A model generated the notes under the pieces. The model searched no databases. It worked only from the letters and a program-made list of their open reading frames with translations, and had not been told where the DNA came from. From assembly GCA_052426225.1 (NCBI GenBank), contig JBNJNM010000021.1:186001-250000 (forward strand): a stretch of DNA of 64,000 bases, in the 5' to 3' direction. The position numbers and the translations under genes are program-made. Of this stretch, positions 8,496 to 17,487 are shown in pieces; the stretch's first letter is position 1, and the number at the start of each line of letters is the position of its first letter. Origin of the DNA: Zancudomyces culisetae HAW-14-8. Lineage: Eukaryota; Fungi; Kickxellomycota.

Positions 8496-11400
8496 ATGGA
8501 CAATGGTCGACATTTTGGGTATTCCACGCCTAAAAAACAACCTTCCCTGTATGGACACCGGAGGTTGTCATTTAAACTACTTGAAAATACATCCAAAGGG
8601 AGAGAATTCAGTAGATTGATTTCAACTCTAGCAAATAAAAGCAATACGAAGTTTAGTCCTAGTAATGACGATAAATCCAACCACGGAAAAAACGACAAGG
8701 GCGATTTCGAACCCTTTGAAAATAAAATATATCTAAAGAACCAGCTTTCTGAAAATCCCCAACAAGAAAAAAGTACAGAAAACATATTCTCAGTGGATAA
8801 AACAGAAGGTCGGGTCAATGGAACTGGATGCCACAATATTCAAGAAACAACAAATTCGACATTTGTCCCTGATTTGCGTAAGTTTACATCCTTTTCGTCC
8901 ATACCAAATTTCACATGGACAGTTCTGCCTTTTGCACATATTAATATTAACGAGCTTTTATTTGAATAATGTTACAATAGAGGATAATGCCGGGTTAAAG
9001 GATATCAACAAAGAGGCAACAATTACTAAAAAACAAGCAGGGGCTGAGAAAAAGGTTGCAAACAGCATCAAGGAAACAGTTAATTGTCATACAAGCATAG
9101 ATCCTGAAAAACCTCCTCCACTGATATCGCCTGCCTTTACAAATTATGATACAACCAACAAAATTTTAAAGAAAATAGGAGAGCGAGCGTTTAGCGACTC
9201 GAAAAAAACGGCATTGTTCGAGAGAAAATACGGAGAAAACAATTTACCAAACTGGCCCGATATAGCTATCTGGAAAGTTCGAGAAAATGACTTGATGTGG
9301 ATGCCAGAATGTTTGTCAGATGATGAATATATTATAGAAGGCACCACAGAAAACAACGAGTTAGAAAAGCGAAAAGAAAAAGCATGTGTAGGGCCGCCTT
9401 CAGAGGAATCAGATTTAACTGGTGTCAATAACAGAGCGTCAAGGCTTTTTAAACTTAAAAACAATCTTTATAAGCATTACGCTGGACTGAAAAAGCTTAA
9501 CAGAAGGCGGAGCACTGGGATTTTGGAAAAGGGCATTACACTAAATCTCAGAGTGAAAGGCAAGGAAACCTTAAACACCAGAGGTCGTTCCATTCATTTA
9601 TATGATTTTAACAGTGGAAGCAATACACCGACTCGCTCAACCAGGCTAAATACAGTTGTCTCAGGTAGAAGGCTTGGGCTCGACACAAAAAACCGCAAGC
9701 TACATAGGACTAAAGGACAAAAGTTGTTTTATTACGGACATGACCAAGGAAATTGCACCATGAATGTCAATAAATTACCAGCTACATTGGTTATTGAGTC
9801 ACCAACCACCTCCAAACTTCAAAAGAGAAGCTCACATACATACGGCGCAAGGTCAAACTCAAACTCAAACTCAACTCGACACATTTCGATGGTACATGGC
9901 AAGGATATAGCGTCAGAAACGGTAGTGGGTATGGATATGAGCGTGAACTCTGAGTTTGACATCAACACCGGATCCGGGTGTAGTGTTTGGCATTCTCAAG
10001 CTATCAGTACCGAAGCTAATGAGCCTGATGATGATAAACTTGCTATACCCGCCTCTTACAAGCAAACTGAAAAAAGTACCAATGCCAGCAGTAATAAGGA
10101 GGATAGATACGAGAGTGATGACTGGAATCAGGATGAATGTAAAAATGAAAAACCACATCTGCGTGCCTCAGAAACAAGTGAGAGTCGGTTAACAATAGAA
10201 GAGATGAAAAGAATGCTTTTTATGGGAGATGTATCCAACGACATAGCTGAGTGTTCATACGAGCTACTACGAAAAATGCAAGACACTGTATTCTGTAAAA
10301 CAATATATCAAAACACAAATGACAGCACTGGTCTATTCAACGCTATAAGATCCGCCCTTGCAAAACAATCAACATATAACTACCAAAGCAAAAAGTATGC
10401 ATCCACAACTATTCATTTTTTGTACGTCGTCTTTTTAACACTGTCCTTCAAGCACAATCCCGAGTTTACCTATTCACTATTGCTAGATCACAGAGTCTTT
10501 GAACAAATAGTTGAAATGTTCCACCTCTCAACTTCATCGGAAGGTCAGGAAATGAGCCGCCTTTCCAGACAAGTCATGGTAAACAATGGAATCGTTTTCT
10601 CCATCGAGGCGTCAAGTACCATTAGCTTAGACTTTCTTTCGCTGTATTTTATCAACAGCGTTATACAAGACCAGGCACCGGCGGCTGTTGCACTTTCTAG
10701 CATGATAAAATCAGAACTTTATAAGTCAGGCACCATTTCTGCTGTTTTTGAGCTGATGCTAACCAAATGGGTTTCTGAATGGTTGGACCACGTATCTTCT
10801 TTGCAGTGCTTCTGGGATCCGCACCAACACTCTTTTTACAGAATAAACGATAATTTATTGATTATTTTACAAATGTCGTTCAGAGTCCTTCAATATGGAA
10901 TCCACTTCAACTGCTTGGATGTCAATAGCACCTCAGTCGAAGCCCAGTCTGCTATTTTGCTTAATCTACTGGATACCACCGAATATCTAATAATGCACTC
11001 TATAGAAAAACATTCAGATCACTTTTTTGGAAAAGATGTGGGGCATATCTCAGGTACATCGTTCCACCTTTTGCCGCAACTCGCTGATTTGATTTCCTAT
11101 GTTCTGGACCTCCTTCTGTTTACGACATTTTCATCCTCAAGCTCTGTGGATACAATTATTTATTCGACAGGTTTTGAATCGATATGCAAATCACTGTTTC
11201 TTCCATTCTCCCCAAACTTGATTTCCTTCTTTTCATGCTTAGAAACATCGTCTCAACAACCCAACATCACTACGCCTATAAACACCCACAAAAAGACTGC
11301 TATTACCGAGTATTTATCTTGTAAGCTTAGAGAAATCGTGCTGTTATCTACAAAACTTCTTTGTAACTGTATAAACGTTTCCAACGCAACCAGGGACTGT

Positions 11401-11772
11401 ATTTTTAGTATAAACATCAATGGTATACCCTGTGTTGATGCCCTGAAAAAGGTGCTATTAGGAATATGCTCAGTAGAGCTGTCAGGTAATAGTAGTATGT
11501 ACACAATAGATAGCCCCATTTCACTGGATAAAGGGGCTATAGTTGGTAGCAGTGGTTTTCCAGATAAATTTCAGCTATTCAACAGCAGTTTTAACCCGAG
11601 CTGCATATCTCGGATTTCCATCACGGAGCTATCAGACCTGCTTACTTTACTCTTATGTTGTATCTATAATTGTTCATCTCTCGGATATGATAAACTCTAT
11701 GGAATTATACCAAAACGCTATATGGATATTTTTCTCCAAAAGCTGAAGAACAATCCTTTTCACCAGTGTTAG
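8496..11772 (+). CDS. WAPL/Rad61-like cohesin release factor, 2 exons (8496-8877, 8981-11772)
   Basis: Intron 8878-8980 (GTAAGT..ACAATAG) joins the two overlapping ORFs in frame. Disordered N-half has YGxR-like motifs. Helical C-half begins LRASETSESRLTIEEMKRML..SYELLRKMQDTVFCK, resembling the start of the Wapl domain. Confidence 0.6.
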
Positions 11773-12004
11773 CACTTATGAGTATTACAGCTTTTTTGTT
11801 CTCGAAGCATACTTTTATTTATTTATTTTTTGGAAAAACAACATGCTTTACTGTTTTTGTTAAGTCTCTTTACTATCAAATATACCATTCCCATGTTTAA
11901 ACTATCTACATTTATTTATTTTTCTGCTAGCCTTATTGCCACTATACCATTAAAAACAGCCCTTTCAAAAAAAAAATTATTTTTTTCCCCAGAATATCCA
12001 CATA

Positions 12005-14365
12005 TTAGCCTAATGTTGAGGCGGTATCAGAACCAGACCCACCATCACTCTTGCTGGACTCTGTAAAAGAGTCCCTCTCCTCATAGTCTTCTTCAGGCTC
12101 GTGAGGTCCATTAAGATTTTCAAGGTAGCTTTGTCCATCTCGTTTTGCTGGCATCATTTCATTTTTCCGATTCCACCTTAATGCATCTTCGAAACTTGTA
12201 GCCGAATGATTCAGTGTTGCCACACCGGTTGTTAGGTTAAAACTTCTAGCTCTCGTATTTTCTATCAGCTCTCTGAGCTCACCCATGTTTTCCCGATCCT
12301 CCCTTATGGACACGAACATTTTAGTAAACTTTCCCAGTGCAAAGATCTTTTTACGCATGTTTTCCCTCCTGACTTTATTGACAGCTTTTCTCGAGCTTGG
12401 CCTTTCGCTTGGATCTTCAGCGTCTCCTTCAGAAGCTATAAATTTGTTTAAGCGTAAGAAATGCATGTTCGAGCTGGGGGTTCAAGTCGGCATTAGCCCT
12501 CAATAAAATATAAAGACAAAAGCGCAAACACAACAGACTTTTAAAAAAATATATGTTTTTACCTTGACTATCACTTTCTTCTTCAGAGGATGTGGCATGA
12601 GTACCATCACCCTTACCTGACTTATCGAAATCTGTTGTAGACTCTAAATCATTACCATCTACACTTAGACTGATCATGCCTTTTTCTACTTCTTCAGGAC
12701 TACAAACGTTTAATATTGCACTCAAAAACTCAGTCACCTTTTCGCCAATATACGGCAATGACCAAGTGAACCCATCCATAAACCCAGGAAGCCAGTATGT
12801 CTTGGTTGACACTGCAGTAAAAGTTTTTAAGTTTACCTCATTATCTTTATAAAAAAGAAAGGCACCCTCATTCCCAAAAACGTCTAGGAAGTTGGGTGCA
12901 CTAAAGAGGCTTATAATAGAGTGATGTCCCTCTTTTGTTTTTCTGTGTAGTTTGTAACCGGTTTTGAGTATCTGATGACCACGGACCATAAACTTTAGCT
13001 TGTTTTTTTTAAGGAAGTTGAATGCAGCATAATGACTATAATAATAAGAGCACGCCCTCATTGTGTTGGGCTCAAAGTCTCTTTCACTGATATGCCTTTC
13101 ATTGCCGACAAGCATCTTTGAGTTGTATGTTGGACTGGGGTCTGACCACACCAGATCGTTAAGTCTACCAAACATTGGTATTTCTTTGTATCTATGCACT
13201 TTTTCTATATCGTTTATTTTTTTTATTTCAGGGCCTATTCCAGCATGCACACACAGCACTGAATTATCAACTATGGCGGCAAGAGGCATGTTATAAAAAG
13301 AGCTAACAACCTCCTCGTATAGCGATATGTTGTATTTTTTGCAACATTCAAGCTTGAACGTGAACCGCTCGGTCATAATTTTGCACTCGTGATTCCCTCG
13401 GAGAAGGTGAACTTTTTTTGGATAGTTGATTTTTAGTGAGTATAACAGCAAAATCGTCTATAGAAAATCAAAGTATACGCGTTATTATAATGTTTCCTTT
13501 ATATTTTTGTATACTCGACAAGATGGTGCTATTCTTGTGTTACCTCGATAGAAAAGTAGCCACGATTGACATAGTTACCCAAAAAAACCATATTTGTGTC
13601 GTTTATGTCACCTGCTATATCCAATGTTTTTACGAGATCGTAGTATTGACCGAGTATATCACCAAAAACTAGTACATGCGTTGTATACAACAAGAGTTTC
13701 AGTTTAGTTTTGATTCTTCTTTTTGATACAATAATAAAACGAAACGATAATATAACAATACGATATCAACACCTTAAGAATATTAATAACTGTTATCGAC
13801 TTACTCGCAACAGGCTGAGTGGTGTGTACAACGTTGTGTTCTTCACGCATAATACTTGATGCCGTGCGGATAATTCGTATTGCATGATCTAGGTCGAGCC
13901 TACCTTCTTGAAGAAGAAATTTTTTTAAGAAATCGACATTTGGAATGTTTTTTTCGATATTGATGAAGAGTTCACTTTCTTTCGGGGTAAATGTTAGCGG
14001 AGGTGAAACGTCTATATTTATAAATGAACACTTATCGTCATTACGCACTAATACTAGAAAAATTTCAAAGCATGAATATATTGTTACGACAAATATATCC
14101 TCATTATTTCTCTTCGTATACCTCCAAAGACACTTGCTGGTTCAAAATAAGTAATATATGTTGATATCGTATATATGCTCAAGAGATAAAAAATCTGTAA
14201 ATTTTAATACAACGCACCTGCCACCATTCTTCCTTTGGTTGACATATGATCACTATCAAATTCTGGCATAGTAAAAACTATTCCAGGCGTCTTCATTACC
14301 ACATCTACTTTATTCGTGCTGTCCTCTACGTCAACGCCCTTATCGGTTGAAATATTCGTTGCCAT
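12005..14365 (-). CDS. Calcineurin A (PP2B catalytic subunit) paralog with degenerate active site; 5 exons (14365-14218, 14011-13805, 13668-13544, 13457-12563, 12435-12005)
   Basis: All introns are GT-AG and frame-consistent. Motifs: [48 protein letters not shown]. CnB-binding [23 protein letters not shown]; CaM-binding [19 protein letters not shown]; autoinhibitory [16 protein letters not shown]. Confidence 0.92.
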
Positions 14366-16407
14366 CTTTCAAGTACACAAGTATATTACAACACATATAC
14401 AATAGAATGACCTTATAAAGTTATTATACTGCAGTATAGAGTAATATTTTTTTTGTAAAGCAGGATTAAGATTAATTGACGTTCTGAGCTAAAACATAAA
14501 AGTATGAAATGATGCATAGATGTATTTGCAGCCATTATTAATTGACAAAACAACCACTTGTTTATTAATGAGGTTCTTCTCTCCTTTTTTTTCTGGGCCC
14601 TGTATTTCCACAACTTTGGGGAAAAAATGAGGAGAGGAGGGGGGGAGTATTCTTCCATTGGGGAAGGGGGAGTAACTATCACGTGAAGTGGTATTACAAG
14701 CCGATTGCGTAACTATAAACAACAAACCCAATAGACTGCGTGAATGTGAGAAAATTTCTACGTCCACTGGGTGTTCTACATTGCGATTAGTGATGGGAGG
14801 AACCTGAGCACTAGAAAGTCCAAGAAAAATTACCCCCGCCTATAAGAGCCTCTGCATGCAAAATTTGAGTTTTATAGAACTCCTATTTGCAGATAGTATC
14901 AGTAGCATCATTGATTATCACTACTTTTGTTTACGCTTTTCTAGAACCCGAGTAGTGAATATATACATGTTTGACAGCCACGCATTGTTCAAAGTAAAAG
15001 CATACCATGATACCACTTGTTTTACAGCAAATAAATACATTTCGTAAGCTTTTCTGATAGAGTGAACTGGCAACCCCCTCTTTTTTTTCTCTAAATGGAT
15101 GATCAACCAACGAAGATAATCGGTTCAGAGATTTCTTATTAATGGAAGCAGATGTGAGTGCTCCAAAAGGATTTTTCAGCCTACAAATCCTACCTAAAAC
15201 AAAAAAAAACTATTTCGTTCGCGGACATGCTCGGGGCGAGCAACTAACCTCTTGAAAGTAACAAAGATCTTTTTTTTTTTTTTGGAAAAAGCGTGTGGTA
15301 TGAGAATAACTAAGCTATAGAGTGTGGATCGCATTTGTGTTGAACCTAGAAAAAATTAAGTGGGTAAAAAGAAAAAACTGAAGGTTGCTGAATACTACAC
15401 CATACTCGTTCAAACCGACAGACTTATTCGTTATTGCACATATCGCATGTTTTTTGCAATATTTCCTTGCTCCTATTGGCACTCAGATGTATATAAACTA
15501 CCTTTTCCTGTCTTTTTGGTGACATTTACCAGAGGAAAAGTGTGCTCATATATGTAATGATCATATTTTGCATCACTGAAAGTTGCATGGTAGGGAGGGA
15601 TGTGTGACCTTTTTTTAAAAAAACGATTTCTAAAAAATGAGATTATCTTATATTTACTAAACACATGATTCACTTTTTTATCGCTAATACTTTCATTATT
15701 TCCCAACCATGTTTTCGGGGGAAAGTATGTCCTAAATAATATTTAGAATACCTTAAAATTGCAGGTATTTCTTGGTAGAATTAACATTTTTATATACTTT
15801 CAATTATAGAAACAGATTAAACCGCAGAAGCGATATAGTCAGCCATTGTGGTTGTTGGTAAGACTCGATCCCTATCAACCCCTCTGCTCTTATCTAGCGC
15901 AGTCACCAAGTGATTACACATTCAACAGTTCTATTCGGATACAATAAAAAAAGGAAAGTGTAATGCAGGAATAATTAACGGGAGAGTTCTGCTCCTCAAT
16001 CACCATTTCATCCACCGCTTTGGTTTATTTTTAAACTACTTTGAGGCTTTATAAAATGTAAAGGGATTTAAACTCTGCTATCTTTCACATCACAGCTTGG
16101 AATTCAAATAAAAACTTGCTTAGGTCAGCAAGGTTTTGTTAACAGGCTCCCTACTGAAGATTTCTGATTATTGTCCTGTGCATATTTGTTCATCTTGTTC
16201 TATTTGATTTTGGTCTCTAAGTATCGGGAAAAAACGCGTAAAAAAATTTTTTTTTCCAAATAGCAAACGTTTTAGTTGGAAAACGACCAAAATAAAAATA
16301 AAAATAAAAATTAAACACTACTGGTTTCCCTTAAACCAAGTTTATAGTAAATAGTTAATAAACGGCTTACAGGAGGCGATAATTATACATCCTTTAAGGT
16401 GGGGAGA

Positions 16408-17487
16408 ATGGATACATTACCAAATTCGTTTAGAGCGGCAGCTGCGGCGGTCACGCAGTTATACAGAGATGCAAATGAGGCATCGATTAACAATTATAAA
16501 CTGGGGTACAACGACTGCATTGATGACTTTATAAAGCATTTTCAAGTGGACCGCGAGATTGCCGAGCTTGAAAAGCTTGATGACGTAACCAAAAATCAAC
16601 TGAGGCCGGAAATTGAAGTAAACTTTGTAACAGACTCGTATGGGAAGAAATGGATAGACATCGATTCGATTCTTTTTTTTGTTTTAAAAAGCAAATCGCG
16701 GGCAGAGAGCAAGAAAAATAAAAGTGAGACGAACTCTATAAATAAGTATAGTAAGTCCCGTGAAGAGGATAGAGAAAATAGATTAAATAACGAAAATACA
16801 AGGAAAAAGGGATGTGATTATAAAGATACTACAGGGATTTTCCATTTGTCCAGAAATTCTATAGGTCCGAATGAAACAGCAAATAACCTACAAGGAGGAA
16901 AAAACAGAACTGAAATGAATGCGGAGGAGCTTTTTCAAAAAAAGGACACCAAGATGCTAGACTTAAATGATTGTAAACACACTGATAAAAACTGCACTTG
17001 TAGCCGACCGGAGCTTAGGCATCTGGGGACTGAAAATCCAAATCAAACAGGAAACCAAACAGCCTCCATAAACGAGCCAAATGACAATAAGATTGAACAG
17101 AGGAAGCACCTTGCAGGCGATAAAGGAGTAGAGCAGGTGGACTCAGTAGGCAATCTTTCTGATAAATTCACCTTTTCATTGAAAAACAGCAACAAAAAGC
17201 ATCTACCTACCTATGAAGAAATAGTAGGTATGTCTGTGGGTGACTCACAAACCGAATACGCGAGAAATCAACAAGACATGTATGCTAGTTTTAGTGAAAG
17301 TATGAACGGACCCATTTGTTTTGGTTCAAAACGGACCATTTACAATCATTCTGCACAAACAGATACACATGCTTTGCAAGATCGACAGGCGTCAAATTGG
17401 GAACATGCATCAAATGTAAATAACTTTGGAGTGTTTGAACCTCCATACAAAAGAATTCATAGACAAGAGGAAATGGATTTGAATTAG
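16408..17487 (+). CDS. HAPSTR1/C16orf72 (DUF4588)-like protein with disordered C-terminus
   Basis: ATG at 16408. N-terminal LPNSFRAAAAAVTQLYR..GYNDCIDDF resembles the F-x-x-[AS]-A-x-[AS]-V-x-x-L-Y-[KR]..GY signature. Basic PPYKRIHR near the end. Confidence 0.55.
   Translation: MDTLPNSFRAAAAAVTQLYRDANEASINNYKLGYNDCIDDFIKHFQVDREIAELEKLDDVTKNQLRPEIEVNFVTDSYGKKWIDIDSILFFVLKSKSRAESKKNKSETNSINKYSKSREEDRENRLNNENTRKKGCDYKDTTGIFHLSRNSIGPNETANNLQGGKNRTEMNAEELFQKKDTKMLDLNDCKHTDKNCTCSRPELRHLGTENPNQTGNQTASINEPNDNKIEQRKHLAGDKGVEQVDSVGNLSDKFTFSLKNSNKKHLPTYEEIVGMSVGDSQTEYARNQQDMYASFSESMNGPICFGSKRTIYNHSAQTDTHALQDRQASNWEHASNVNNFGVFEPPYKRIHRQEEMDLN

What the first reader, a model, noticed from the sequence alone, without database searches (positions are those of the whole stretch)
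12005..14365. Calcineurin A pseudophosphatase: intact gene, degenerate metal centre, regulatory modules retained
Seen: the 125-nt exon 13668-13544, missed by the ORF track, reads [26 protein letters not shown]. Established: PPP phosphatases need GDxHG and GDxVDRG. Here the Fe-ligand His is Leu (codon 13654-13652), the metal-bridging Asp is Asn (13576-13574) and the second Asp is Asn (13567-13565); SAPNY is also SAPNF. GNHE, the two later His ligands, the CnB-binding helix, the calmodulin-binding segment and the autoinhibitory-like peptide are kept, and all five exons splice in frame with no stops. Inference: a selected, catalytically dead or altered calcineurin that could titrate CnB/calmodulin, trap phospho-substrates or act as a decoy for immunophilin-inhibitor complexes. 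This would be a non-catalytic layer of Ca2+ signalling that I do not know to be described in fungi.
Basis: partly seen in the sequence, partly recalled or inferred. Interest (0 to 1): 0.8.

Follow-up and report, generated by a model that had tools for sequence, protein, structure and literature searches.

The report
Catalytically crippled second calcineurin, gut fungus
The mosquito-gut fungus Zancudomyces culisetae keeps, besides its normal calcineurin, an old and intact second copy that has lost key catalytic residues but still carries the calcineurin-B- and calmodulin-binding parts, so it probably acts as a calcium-responsive binding protein rather than as a phosphatase.

Summary
Observation confirmed. 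The five-exon gene (601 aa, no stops, GT-AG introns) is a calcineurin A paralogue of Zancudomyces culisetae with His92>Leu, Asp118>Asn, Asp121>Asn and Tyr311>Phe (human numbering). A second strain's assembly has the same codons. A canonical calcineurin A sits at the locus syntenic with other Harpellales; the nine other PPP loci have canonical metal motifs. Synonymous sites are saturated, 36% of otherwise invariant residues changed, conservatively, and no stop arose (0 of 300 neutral simulations per setting), so the protein has been selected. New here: substrate-recognition surfaces are eroded too (PxIxIT strand NIR>NLK; Glu237, Glu282, Gln284 pocket lost), while the CnB helix, Trp352 and the calmodulin helix are kept. 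This favours a CnB/calmodulin-binding pseudophosphatase over a trap for normal substrates. Degenerate calcineurins are proposed in trypanosomatids and occur in environmental sequences; I found no fungal report. The look-ups of earlier scan notes showed no such finding on other DNA.

The parts
14218..14365 (-). Exon 1 (148 nt), start codon and N-terminal extension
   Evidence: intron position and phase shared with Furculomyces calcineurin A
13805..14011 (-). Exon 2 (207 nt), start of the catalytic domain (EGRL motif)
13544..13668 (-). Exon 3 (125 nt) carrying both degenerate PPP motifs, GDILG and GNYVNRG
   Evidence: weak Metallophos, E 0.014; 55% identical to human PPP3CA
13652..13654 (-). Leu124 in place of the metal ligand His92
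13574..13576 (-). Asn150 in place of the metal-bridging Asp118
13565..13567 (-). Asn153 in place of Asp121 (equivalent of PP1 D95 and PP2A D88)
   Evidence: PMC9396060
12563..13457 (-). Exon 4 (895 nt): rest of the catalytic domain, CnB-binding helix, acidic linker
   Evidence: (Metallophos E 5.7e-18), (model of this exon matches calcineurin structures, TM about 0.75)
13386..13397 (-). GNHE motif intact (Asn150 and His151 equivalents)
13131..13133 (-). Pro269 in place of Glu237 (acidic substrate pocket)
   Evidence: PMC13022171
12966..12977 (-). His281 equivalent kept; Glu282>Gln and Gln284>Leu (substrate-recruiting pocket lost)
   Evidence: PMC13022171
12888..12902 (-). SAPNF in place of SAPNY (Tyr311>Phe)
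12825..12833 (-). PxIxIT-docking strand, NIR changed to NLK
   Evidence: bioRxiv 10.1101/632547
12702..12779 (-). Calcineurin-B-binding helix with the LxVP pocket residues (Trp352 kept, Phe356>Tyr)
   Evidence: PMC5653234
12005..12435 (-). Exon 5 (431 nt): regulatory region, acidic tail, stop codon
   Evidence: matches calcineurin A residues 379-490, E 1.8e-6
12302..12370 (-). Calmodulin-binding basic helix (residues 481-503, net charge +7)
12140..12202 (-). Autoinhibitory-domain-like peptide (residues 537-557), partly conserved
   Evidence: 5 of 9 conserved columns kept, paralogue 9 of 9

Best explanation
An old DNA-level duplicate of calcineurin A that moved away from the ancestral locus, lost its dinuclear metal centre, and is kept by selection as a non-catalytic, calcium-responsive binding protein. 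Shown: intact gene, lost ligands, canonical paralogue, purifying selection, pattern of kept and lost surfaces. Inferred: it folds as a PPP domain, pairs with the genome's single calcineurin B through the retained helix, binds Ca2+/calmodulin, and does not hydrolyse phosphoproteins. The most likely mode of action is as a CnB/calmodulin-bound pseudo-holoenzyme that competes with the active calcineurin for CnB, calmodulin and LxVP-type partners, or that holds its own partners in a calcium-gated way. It is less likely to capture the normal PxIxIT substrates.
For: Three ligand or catalytic residues changed in two strains. Single equivalent changes are described as inactive or loss-of-function: PP2A H59Q and D88N, PP1 D95N; human His92Arg is a recurrent catalytic-domain disease variant. 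A canonical copy exists, 39% identical, next to TMA7 as in Furculomyces, S. culicis and S. simulii. dS is saturated and dN is 0.48 in the core; omega = 1 is rejected, 2dL 146. Neutral decay to the same divergence gives 11-14 stops, and 0 of 300 runs were stop-free; the observed changes are conservative, mean BLOSUM 0.0 against -0.7 +/- 0.2. Conserved columns kept: catalytic domain 105/197 against 169/197 in the paralogue (p 2e-12); CnB plus calmodulin segments 27/40 against 33/40 (p 0.2). One CnB and one calmodulin gene were seen among the EF-hand loci examined.
Against: No orthologue in 5.8 billion proteins, in the exhaustive representative search (next best 48%) or in JGI metagenomes, so conservation of the dead state across species is unproven. 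The within-protein contrast between regulatory and catalytic retention is not significant (p 0.12). The autoinhibitory peptide and seven catalytic or metal residues are still there, which an active enzyme would also need. The PxIxIT (9/12 changed) versus LxVP (3/12) contrast (p 0.04) uses residue sets partly chosen from my own knowledge. The omega estimate averages over the whole history, including time before catalysis was lost.
Confidence: 0.58

Rival explanations
1. A divergent but still active metallophosphatase with a mononuclear or remodelled metal site and new substrates, still gated by calcium/calmodulin.
For: Asp90, Asn150, His151, His199, His281, Arg122 and Arg254 equivalents are kept, as is an autoinhibitory-like peptide. 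Predicted pseudophosphatases have turned out active: T. cruzi CaNA2 on pNPP and yeast Ppn2.
Against: Two of the three ligands of the first metal, including the bridging Asp, and the Asp that partners His151 are lost together; CaNA2 lost only one metal ligand. Catalytic residues changed at the background rate, which is not expected if catalysis were selected.
Confidence: 0.15
2. A substrate trap or shield: it binds phosphorylated calcineurin substrates in the dead active site, like the engineered D90A trap or STYX-type pseudophosphatases, and protects them from the active enzyme.
For: Both phosphate-binding arginines, His151 and three ligands of the second metal are kept; the LxVP pocket is largely kept. 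Calcineurin D90A, which lacks the first metal, traps substrate.
Against: The PxIxIT strand and groove and the Glu237/Glu282/Gln284 pocket that recruit normal substrates are changed. Keeping 7 of 10 residues is what the background rate predicts.
Confidence: 0.12
3. A duplicate that was once selected but is now non-functional or close to neutral, and has not yet picked up a stop.
For: Very long branch, about ten times the paralogue's; one species only; between-strain pN/pS of 0.35 is not significantly below 1 on synonymous sites alone (p 0.13); no expression data. Earlier scan notes list many pseudoenzyme candidates in this genome (unchecked), which may reflect general relaxation.
Against: Pure neutral decay is excluded. 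ORF and all splice sites are intact in two strains, and 3 of the 4 amino-acid differences lie outside the conserved core. With intron sites pooled the deficit of amino-acid changes is significant (p 0.03). Retention follows column conservation: 64, 48, 33, 23%.
Confidence: 0.1
4. A decoy that soaks up FK506-FKBP12 or cyclosporin-cyclophilin complexes made by competing microbes.
For: The composite CnA/CnB surface around Tyr341, Pro344, Trp352, Ser353, Pro355 and Glu359 is kept (its role in drug binding is from my own knowledge).
Against: The same residues are needed for CnB binding anyway; Tyr159>Arg and Tyr315>Phe on the catalytic side are changed; nothing here indicates exposure to such drugs in insect guts.
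Confidence: 0.03
5. Artefact or repair at the RNA level: sequencing error, a missed alternative exon with canonical motifs, or RNA editing.
For: Both Asn codons are one A-to-G step from Asp, the change that A-to-I editing makes.
Against: Two independent assemblies agree. No canonical motif lies on the gene's strand in 11000-16500 and no extra copy of the exon exists in the genome. The Leu codon cannot be turned into His by A-to-I editing.
Confidence: 0.02

Closest known systems
Calcineurin A (PP2B/PPP3C; fungal CNA1/CnaA), including the canonical Z. culisetae copy at G000:C11 (L002)
   Same: Domain order (catalytic, CnB helix, calmodulin helix, autoinhibitory peptide), fold, intron positions, 45-48% identity in the catalytic part.
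   Different: His92, Asp118, Asp121, Tyr311, Tyr159, Glu237, Glu282, Gln284 and the PxIxIT strand are changed; 66 of 183 invariant columns changed against 15 in the paralogue.
Trypanosomatid CaNA2 and kinetoplastid PPP candidate pseudophosphatases (PMC3907409, PMC8470620, PMC2994645)
   Same: A second, divergent calcineurin A next to a conventional one, with catalytic-site changes and CnB binding.
   Different: T. cruzi CaNA2 lost only one metal ligand, is active on pNPP and lacks the calmodulin and autoinhibitory domains. The fungal protein lost three key residues and keeps both regulatory segments. Independent origin (inference).
Engineered or clinical dead PPP mutants (calcineurin D90A trap, H151Q, His92Arg; PP1 D95N; PP2A H59Q and D88N)
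   Same: The same or equivalent residues; loss of metal or catalysis with the docking modules left in place.
   Different: Those are single changes in an otherwise normal enzyme; here three changes sit in a broadly diverged natural paralogue whose substrate docking is eroded too.
Fungal pseudophosphatases catalogued in PMC13216928 (Oca, STYX, Tim50, NIF, Ppn2-type PPP-like)
   Same: Phosphatase fold with mutated catalytic motifs in a fungus.
   Different: The PPP-like cases named there are Ppn2-type or calcineurin-like phosphoesterases; in the passages read no calcineurin A case is named, and Zoopagomycota are not mentioned.
Unnamed degenerate calcineurin A sequences from public data (P0221, P0247, P0181, P0151; Multifurca P0271)
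   Same: Calcineurin-type proteins with broken GDxHG/GDxVDRG motifs; P0221 also keeps CnB-, calmodulin- and autoinhibitory-like segments, and has four near-identical cluster members.
   Different: Different substitutions; they are no closer to this protein than ordinary calcineurins and mostly sit with other lineages in a fast tree (P0181's place is unresolved). Uncharacterised.

Membership tests
Calcineurin A (PPP3) by descent | PPP catalytic domain closest to PP2B | tested here: met
   Best PDB and database matches are all calcineurin A; 238 bits to the genome's calcineurin against 107 to the next PPP
Calcineurin A (PPP3) by descent | CnB-binding helix after the catalytic domain | tested here: met
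   21 of 30 conserved columns kept in residues 377-413; helical in the model, at modest confidence
Calcineurin A (PPP3) by descent | Calmodulin-binding helix and autoinhibitory peptide | tested here: met
   Exon 5 matches calcineurin A 379-490, E 1.8e-6; calmodulin segment 6/10 conserved columns, equal to the paralogue; autoinhibitory segment 5/9
Active PPP phosphatase | GDxHG motif (metal ligands Asp90, His92) | tested here: not met
   GDILG
Active PPP phosphatase | GDxVDRG motif (Asp118, Asp121, Arg122) | tested here: not met
   GNYVNRG
Active PPP phosphatase | GNHE motif, His199, His281, Arg254 | tested here: met
Active PPP phosphatase | Measured phosphatase activity and two bound metals | not testable with these tools
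   needs purified protein
Pseudophosphatase | Catalytic residues lost in a homologue of an active family | tested here: met
Pseudophosphatase | Intact gene under purifying selection (not a pseudogene) | tested here: met
   the evidence is long-term, present-day constraint is only weakly supported
Pseudophosphatase | Expressed as RNA and protein | not tested
Pseudophosphatase | Dead state conserved in orthologues of other species | tested here: inconclusive
   No orthologue found; other Harpellales genomes could not be searched directly
Pseudophosphatase | Demonstrated non-catalytic function | not testable with these tools
   needs binding and genetic tests

The most novel reading that the evidence does not exclude
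A natural, expressed, catalytically dead calcineurin A that assembles with calcineurin B and calmodulin and works as a dedicated calcium-gated inhibitor or scaffold of calcineurin signalling in a fungus, one of several independent origins of such pseudo-calcineurins in eukaryotes.
Probability: 0.35. Interest if true: 0.78.

Novelty: new variant of a known kind. Interest (0 to 1): 0.52.

Why it matters
PPP metal ligands are described as 100% conserved across the family (PMC13022171), and no PPP-like pseudophosphatase is reported in humans (PMC13216928), so a natural dead calcineurin with its regulatory arm intact is rare. If it binds CnB and calmodulin it would be a built-in regulator of a pathway that is an antifungal drug target. 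It would also be a natural counterpart of human catalytic-site variants such as His92Arg, and a ready test of what calcineurin can do without catalysis. Its reach is limited for now: one species, no orthologue, no expression data. The public annotation (OMH82546.1) starts downstream of the degenerate exon, so motif-based surveys of annotated proteins would miss it.

Tried and rejected
Sequencing error: rejected, a second assembly agrees. Only calcineurin A in the genome: rejected. Alternative exon with canonical motifs: none. A-to-I editing: cannot account for the Leu codon. Retrocopy: rejected, three ancestral introns are kept, including intron 1, which the canonical Z. culisetae copy lacks. 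Recent neutral decay from the start: rejected. Dating the duplication: failed; the best core tree puts it with Kickxellomycotina (90/99, not starred), but AU tests reject neither sisterhood to the paralogue (p 0.33), to Kickxellales (0.19), nor a place with the animal outgroup (0.16). Orthologue searches: three word searches, the exhaustive search and the metagenome scan found none. The word searches on this gene saw only proteins up to about 600 aa, and the exhaustive search shows one representative per 50% cluster. The exon 4 model lacks the degenerate motifs and says nothing about metal binding. A paper search for specific calcineurin Asp118/Asp121 mutants returned nothing.

Full report
Source. 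The best protein hit is 100% identical over its span and is named Zancudomyces culisetae PP2B catalytic subunit, OMH82546.1. The genome (27.09 Mb, 25 contigs) is close to the HiFi assembly of strain HAW-14-8 described in PMC12611240 (27.2 Mb, 26 contigs). That it is this strain is my inference. The older Illumina assembly GCA_001969505.1 comes from another strain and is 99.1% identical here. Z. culisetae is a Harpellales gut symbiont of aquatic insect larvae.

Observation. The minus-strand model 14365-14218, 14011-13805, 13668-13544, 13457-12563, 12435-12005 gives 601 codons and one stop, with four GT-AG introns. Its first three introns lie at CDS positions 148, 355 and 480, exactly as in Furculomyces calcineurin A, which supports the model independently. 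In human numbering His92>Leu, Asp118>Asn, Asp121>Asn and Tyr311>Phe, while Asp90, Arg122, Asn150, His151, His199, Arg254 and His281 are kept. The second strain has the same codons, four synonymous and four non-synonymous differences elsewhere, and no indel or stop. The public annotation begins at residue 255, downstream of the degenerate exon.

Genomic context. The genome has ten PPP loci; all but this one show canonical GDxHG and GDxVDRG motifs. One, L002 on contig C11, is a complete calcineurin A, 39% identical to this protein. It lies tail to tail with TMA7, as do the calcineurin genes of Furculomyces boomerangus, Smittium culicis and S. simulii. So L002 is the ancestral locus and this gene is the displaced copy. 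It kept intron 1, which L002 lacks, so it is a DNA-level duplicate. One CnB gene (C13), one calmodulin (C11) and one calmodulin-like gene (C21) were recognised among the EF-hand loci I translated; both A subunits would then share one B subunit.

Selection. In the core (residues 78-413) dN to the paralogue is 0.48 and dS is saturated; omega = 1 is rejected (2dL 146; 23 for the regulatory segment). Of 168 columns invariant in other calcineurins and in the paralogue, 60 (36%) changed. Neutral simulation to that level gives 11-14 stop codons, 0 of 300 runs were stop-free in every setting, and simulated changes are less conservative than the observed ones (BLOSUM -0.7 +/- 0.2 against 0.0). Retention falls with column conservation (64, 48, 33, 23%). 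This shows long-term selection on the protein. It does not date the loss of catalysis. Present-day constraint rests on two strains only: pN/pS 0.35, p 0.13 on synonymous sites, p 0.03 with introns pooled, and neighbouring genes range from 0 to 1.5 on a handful of sites.

What is kept and lost. Against 113 fungal calcineurins the catalytic domain keeps 105 of 197 conserved columns (paralogue 169; p 2e-12). The CnB and calmodulin segments keep 27 of 40 (paralogue 33; p 0.2), and the calmodulin segment alone 6 of 10, equal to the paralogue. The within-protein difference is not significant (p 0.12). Three of ten catalytic or metal residues are lost, which is the background rate for invariant sites: catalysis is not protected, but it was not singled out either. 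The PxIxIT strand 330NIR332 (bioRxiv 10.1101/632547) reads NLK, with further changes at 275, 290, 299, 300, 328 and 333 (their role is from my own knowledge). On the LxVP side Trp352 is kept and Phe356 is Tyr (PMC5653234). The autoinhibitory peptide is recognisable but partly changed. An AlphaFold model of exon 4 alone (pLDDT 75) matches calcineurin structures best (TM about 0.75).

Likely activity. The first metal loses two of three ligands, including the bridging Asp, and the Asp that partners His151 is gone (ligand assignments from established PPP chemistry, own knowledge). Single equivalent changes are treated as inactive or loss-of-function: PP2A H59Q and D88N (PMC9396060), PP1 D95N (bioRxiv 10.1101/2023.12.21.572751). 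Human His92Arg is a recurrent catalytic-domain disease variant, a class reported as loss-of-function in yeast tests (PMC12179222). I put loss of normal phosphatase activity at about 0.83. The caution is real: T. cruzi CaNA2 and yeast Ppn2 were predicted dead and are active.

Mechanism. Shown: intact selected gene, lost ligands, eroded substrate docking, retained regulatory arm, canonical partner. Inferred: it forms a pseudo-holoenzyme with CnB, binds Ca2+/calmodulin, and either competes with the active enzyme for CnB, calmodulin and LxVP-type partners or holds its own partners in a calcium-gated way (0.58). Rivals: altered activity (0.15), phospho-substrate trap (0.12), now neutral (0.10), drug decoy (0.03), artefact (0.02).

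Relatives. No orthologue was found: the next best hit is 48% identical in both the word search and the exhaustive search, a search with the C-terminal part returned only the gene itself, the six other Harpellales calcineurins retrieved are canonical, and the metagenome scan was empty. I used the costly exhaustive search because the claim rests on absence of relatives. These blanks are limited by length windows and by clustering at 50%. Trees leave the long branch unplaced. The exhaustive search did show five other calcineurin-type proteins with broken motifs among 126 scorable rows, one of them (P0221) with all regulatory segments. Dead calcineurins therefore seem to have arisen more than once.

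Comparison and novelty. By descent this is a calcineurin A; it fails two defining motifs of an active PPP; it meets the sequence-level definition of a pseudophosphatase, with expression and function untested. Candidate calcineurin pseudophosphatases are proposed in trypanosomatids. A 2026 fungal survey names PPP-like cases of other types and does not mention Zoopagomycota. Ten paper searches found no fungal calcineurin A pseudoenzyme. Verdict: new variant of a known kind, real and well supported at sequence level, single-species and untested. Interest 0.52.

Limits of method. Searches and folding used single exons by reference or a database protein; the joined step was left out, and the joined model was used only in local scripts.

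Noticed in passing
L011:8001-9171 (OMH82546.1): The public annotation of this gene is truncated to 347 aa and omits exons 1-3 and the start of exon 4, hiding the degenerate motifs; it is labelled as an ordinary PP2B catalytic subunit.
   Followed up: yes
L044:1373-2947 (P0221, Logan SRR33036525 and SRR33036520): A 524-aa calcineurin A from an unidentified organism with six of ten catalytic or metal residues changed, yet with CnB-, calmodulin- and autoinhibitory-like segments; four near-identical cluster members. An apparently independent pseudo-calcineurin.
   Followed up: partly
L046:535-1722 (P0247), and proteins P0181, P0151, P0271: Further calcineurin-type proteins with broken metal motifs. 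P0247 has the same GNYVNRG motif; P0271 (Multifurca ochricompacta) looks like a decaying or mis-modelled copy.
   Followed up: partly
L002 (G000:C11:5143738-5147478): The canonical calcineurin A lacks intron 1, which Furculomyces and the degenerate copy both have; the calcineurin-TMA7 adjacency is conserved in four Harpellales.
   Followed up: yes
window 8818-11772: The 984-aa ORF downstream has no nucleotide difference between the two strains over about 2.95 kb, while its neighbours differ at 3-8 coding sites; no Pfam match.
   Followed up: no
G000:C6:1636942-1637484 and C10:1369998-1370540 (L008, L009): A PPP gene with the same motifs and match score appears on two contigs, as do several EF-hand loci (C6/C10, C12/C25, C12/C6), pointing to redundant contigs or segmental duplicates in the assembly.
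   Followed up: no
G000:C21:979005-979409 (L013): A divergent calmodulin-like gene exists besides the conventional calmodulin on C11; it is a possible alternative partner for the degenerate calcineurin.
   Followed up: no
window 13107-13124: An insertion of about six residues relative to other calcineurins in the loop after the WSDP motif, with low model confidence.
   Followed up: no
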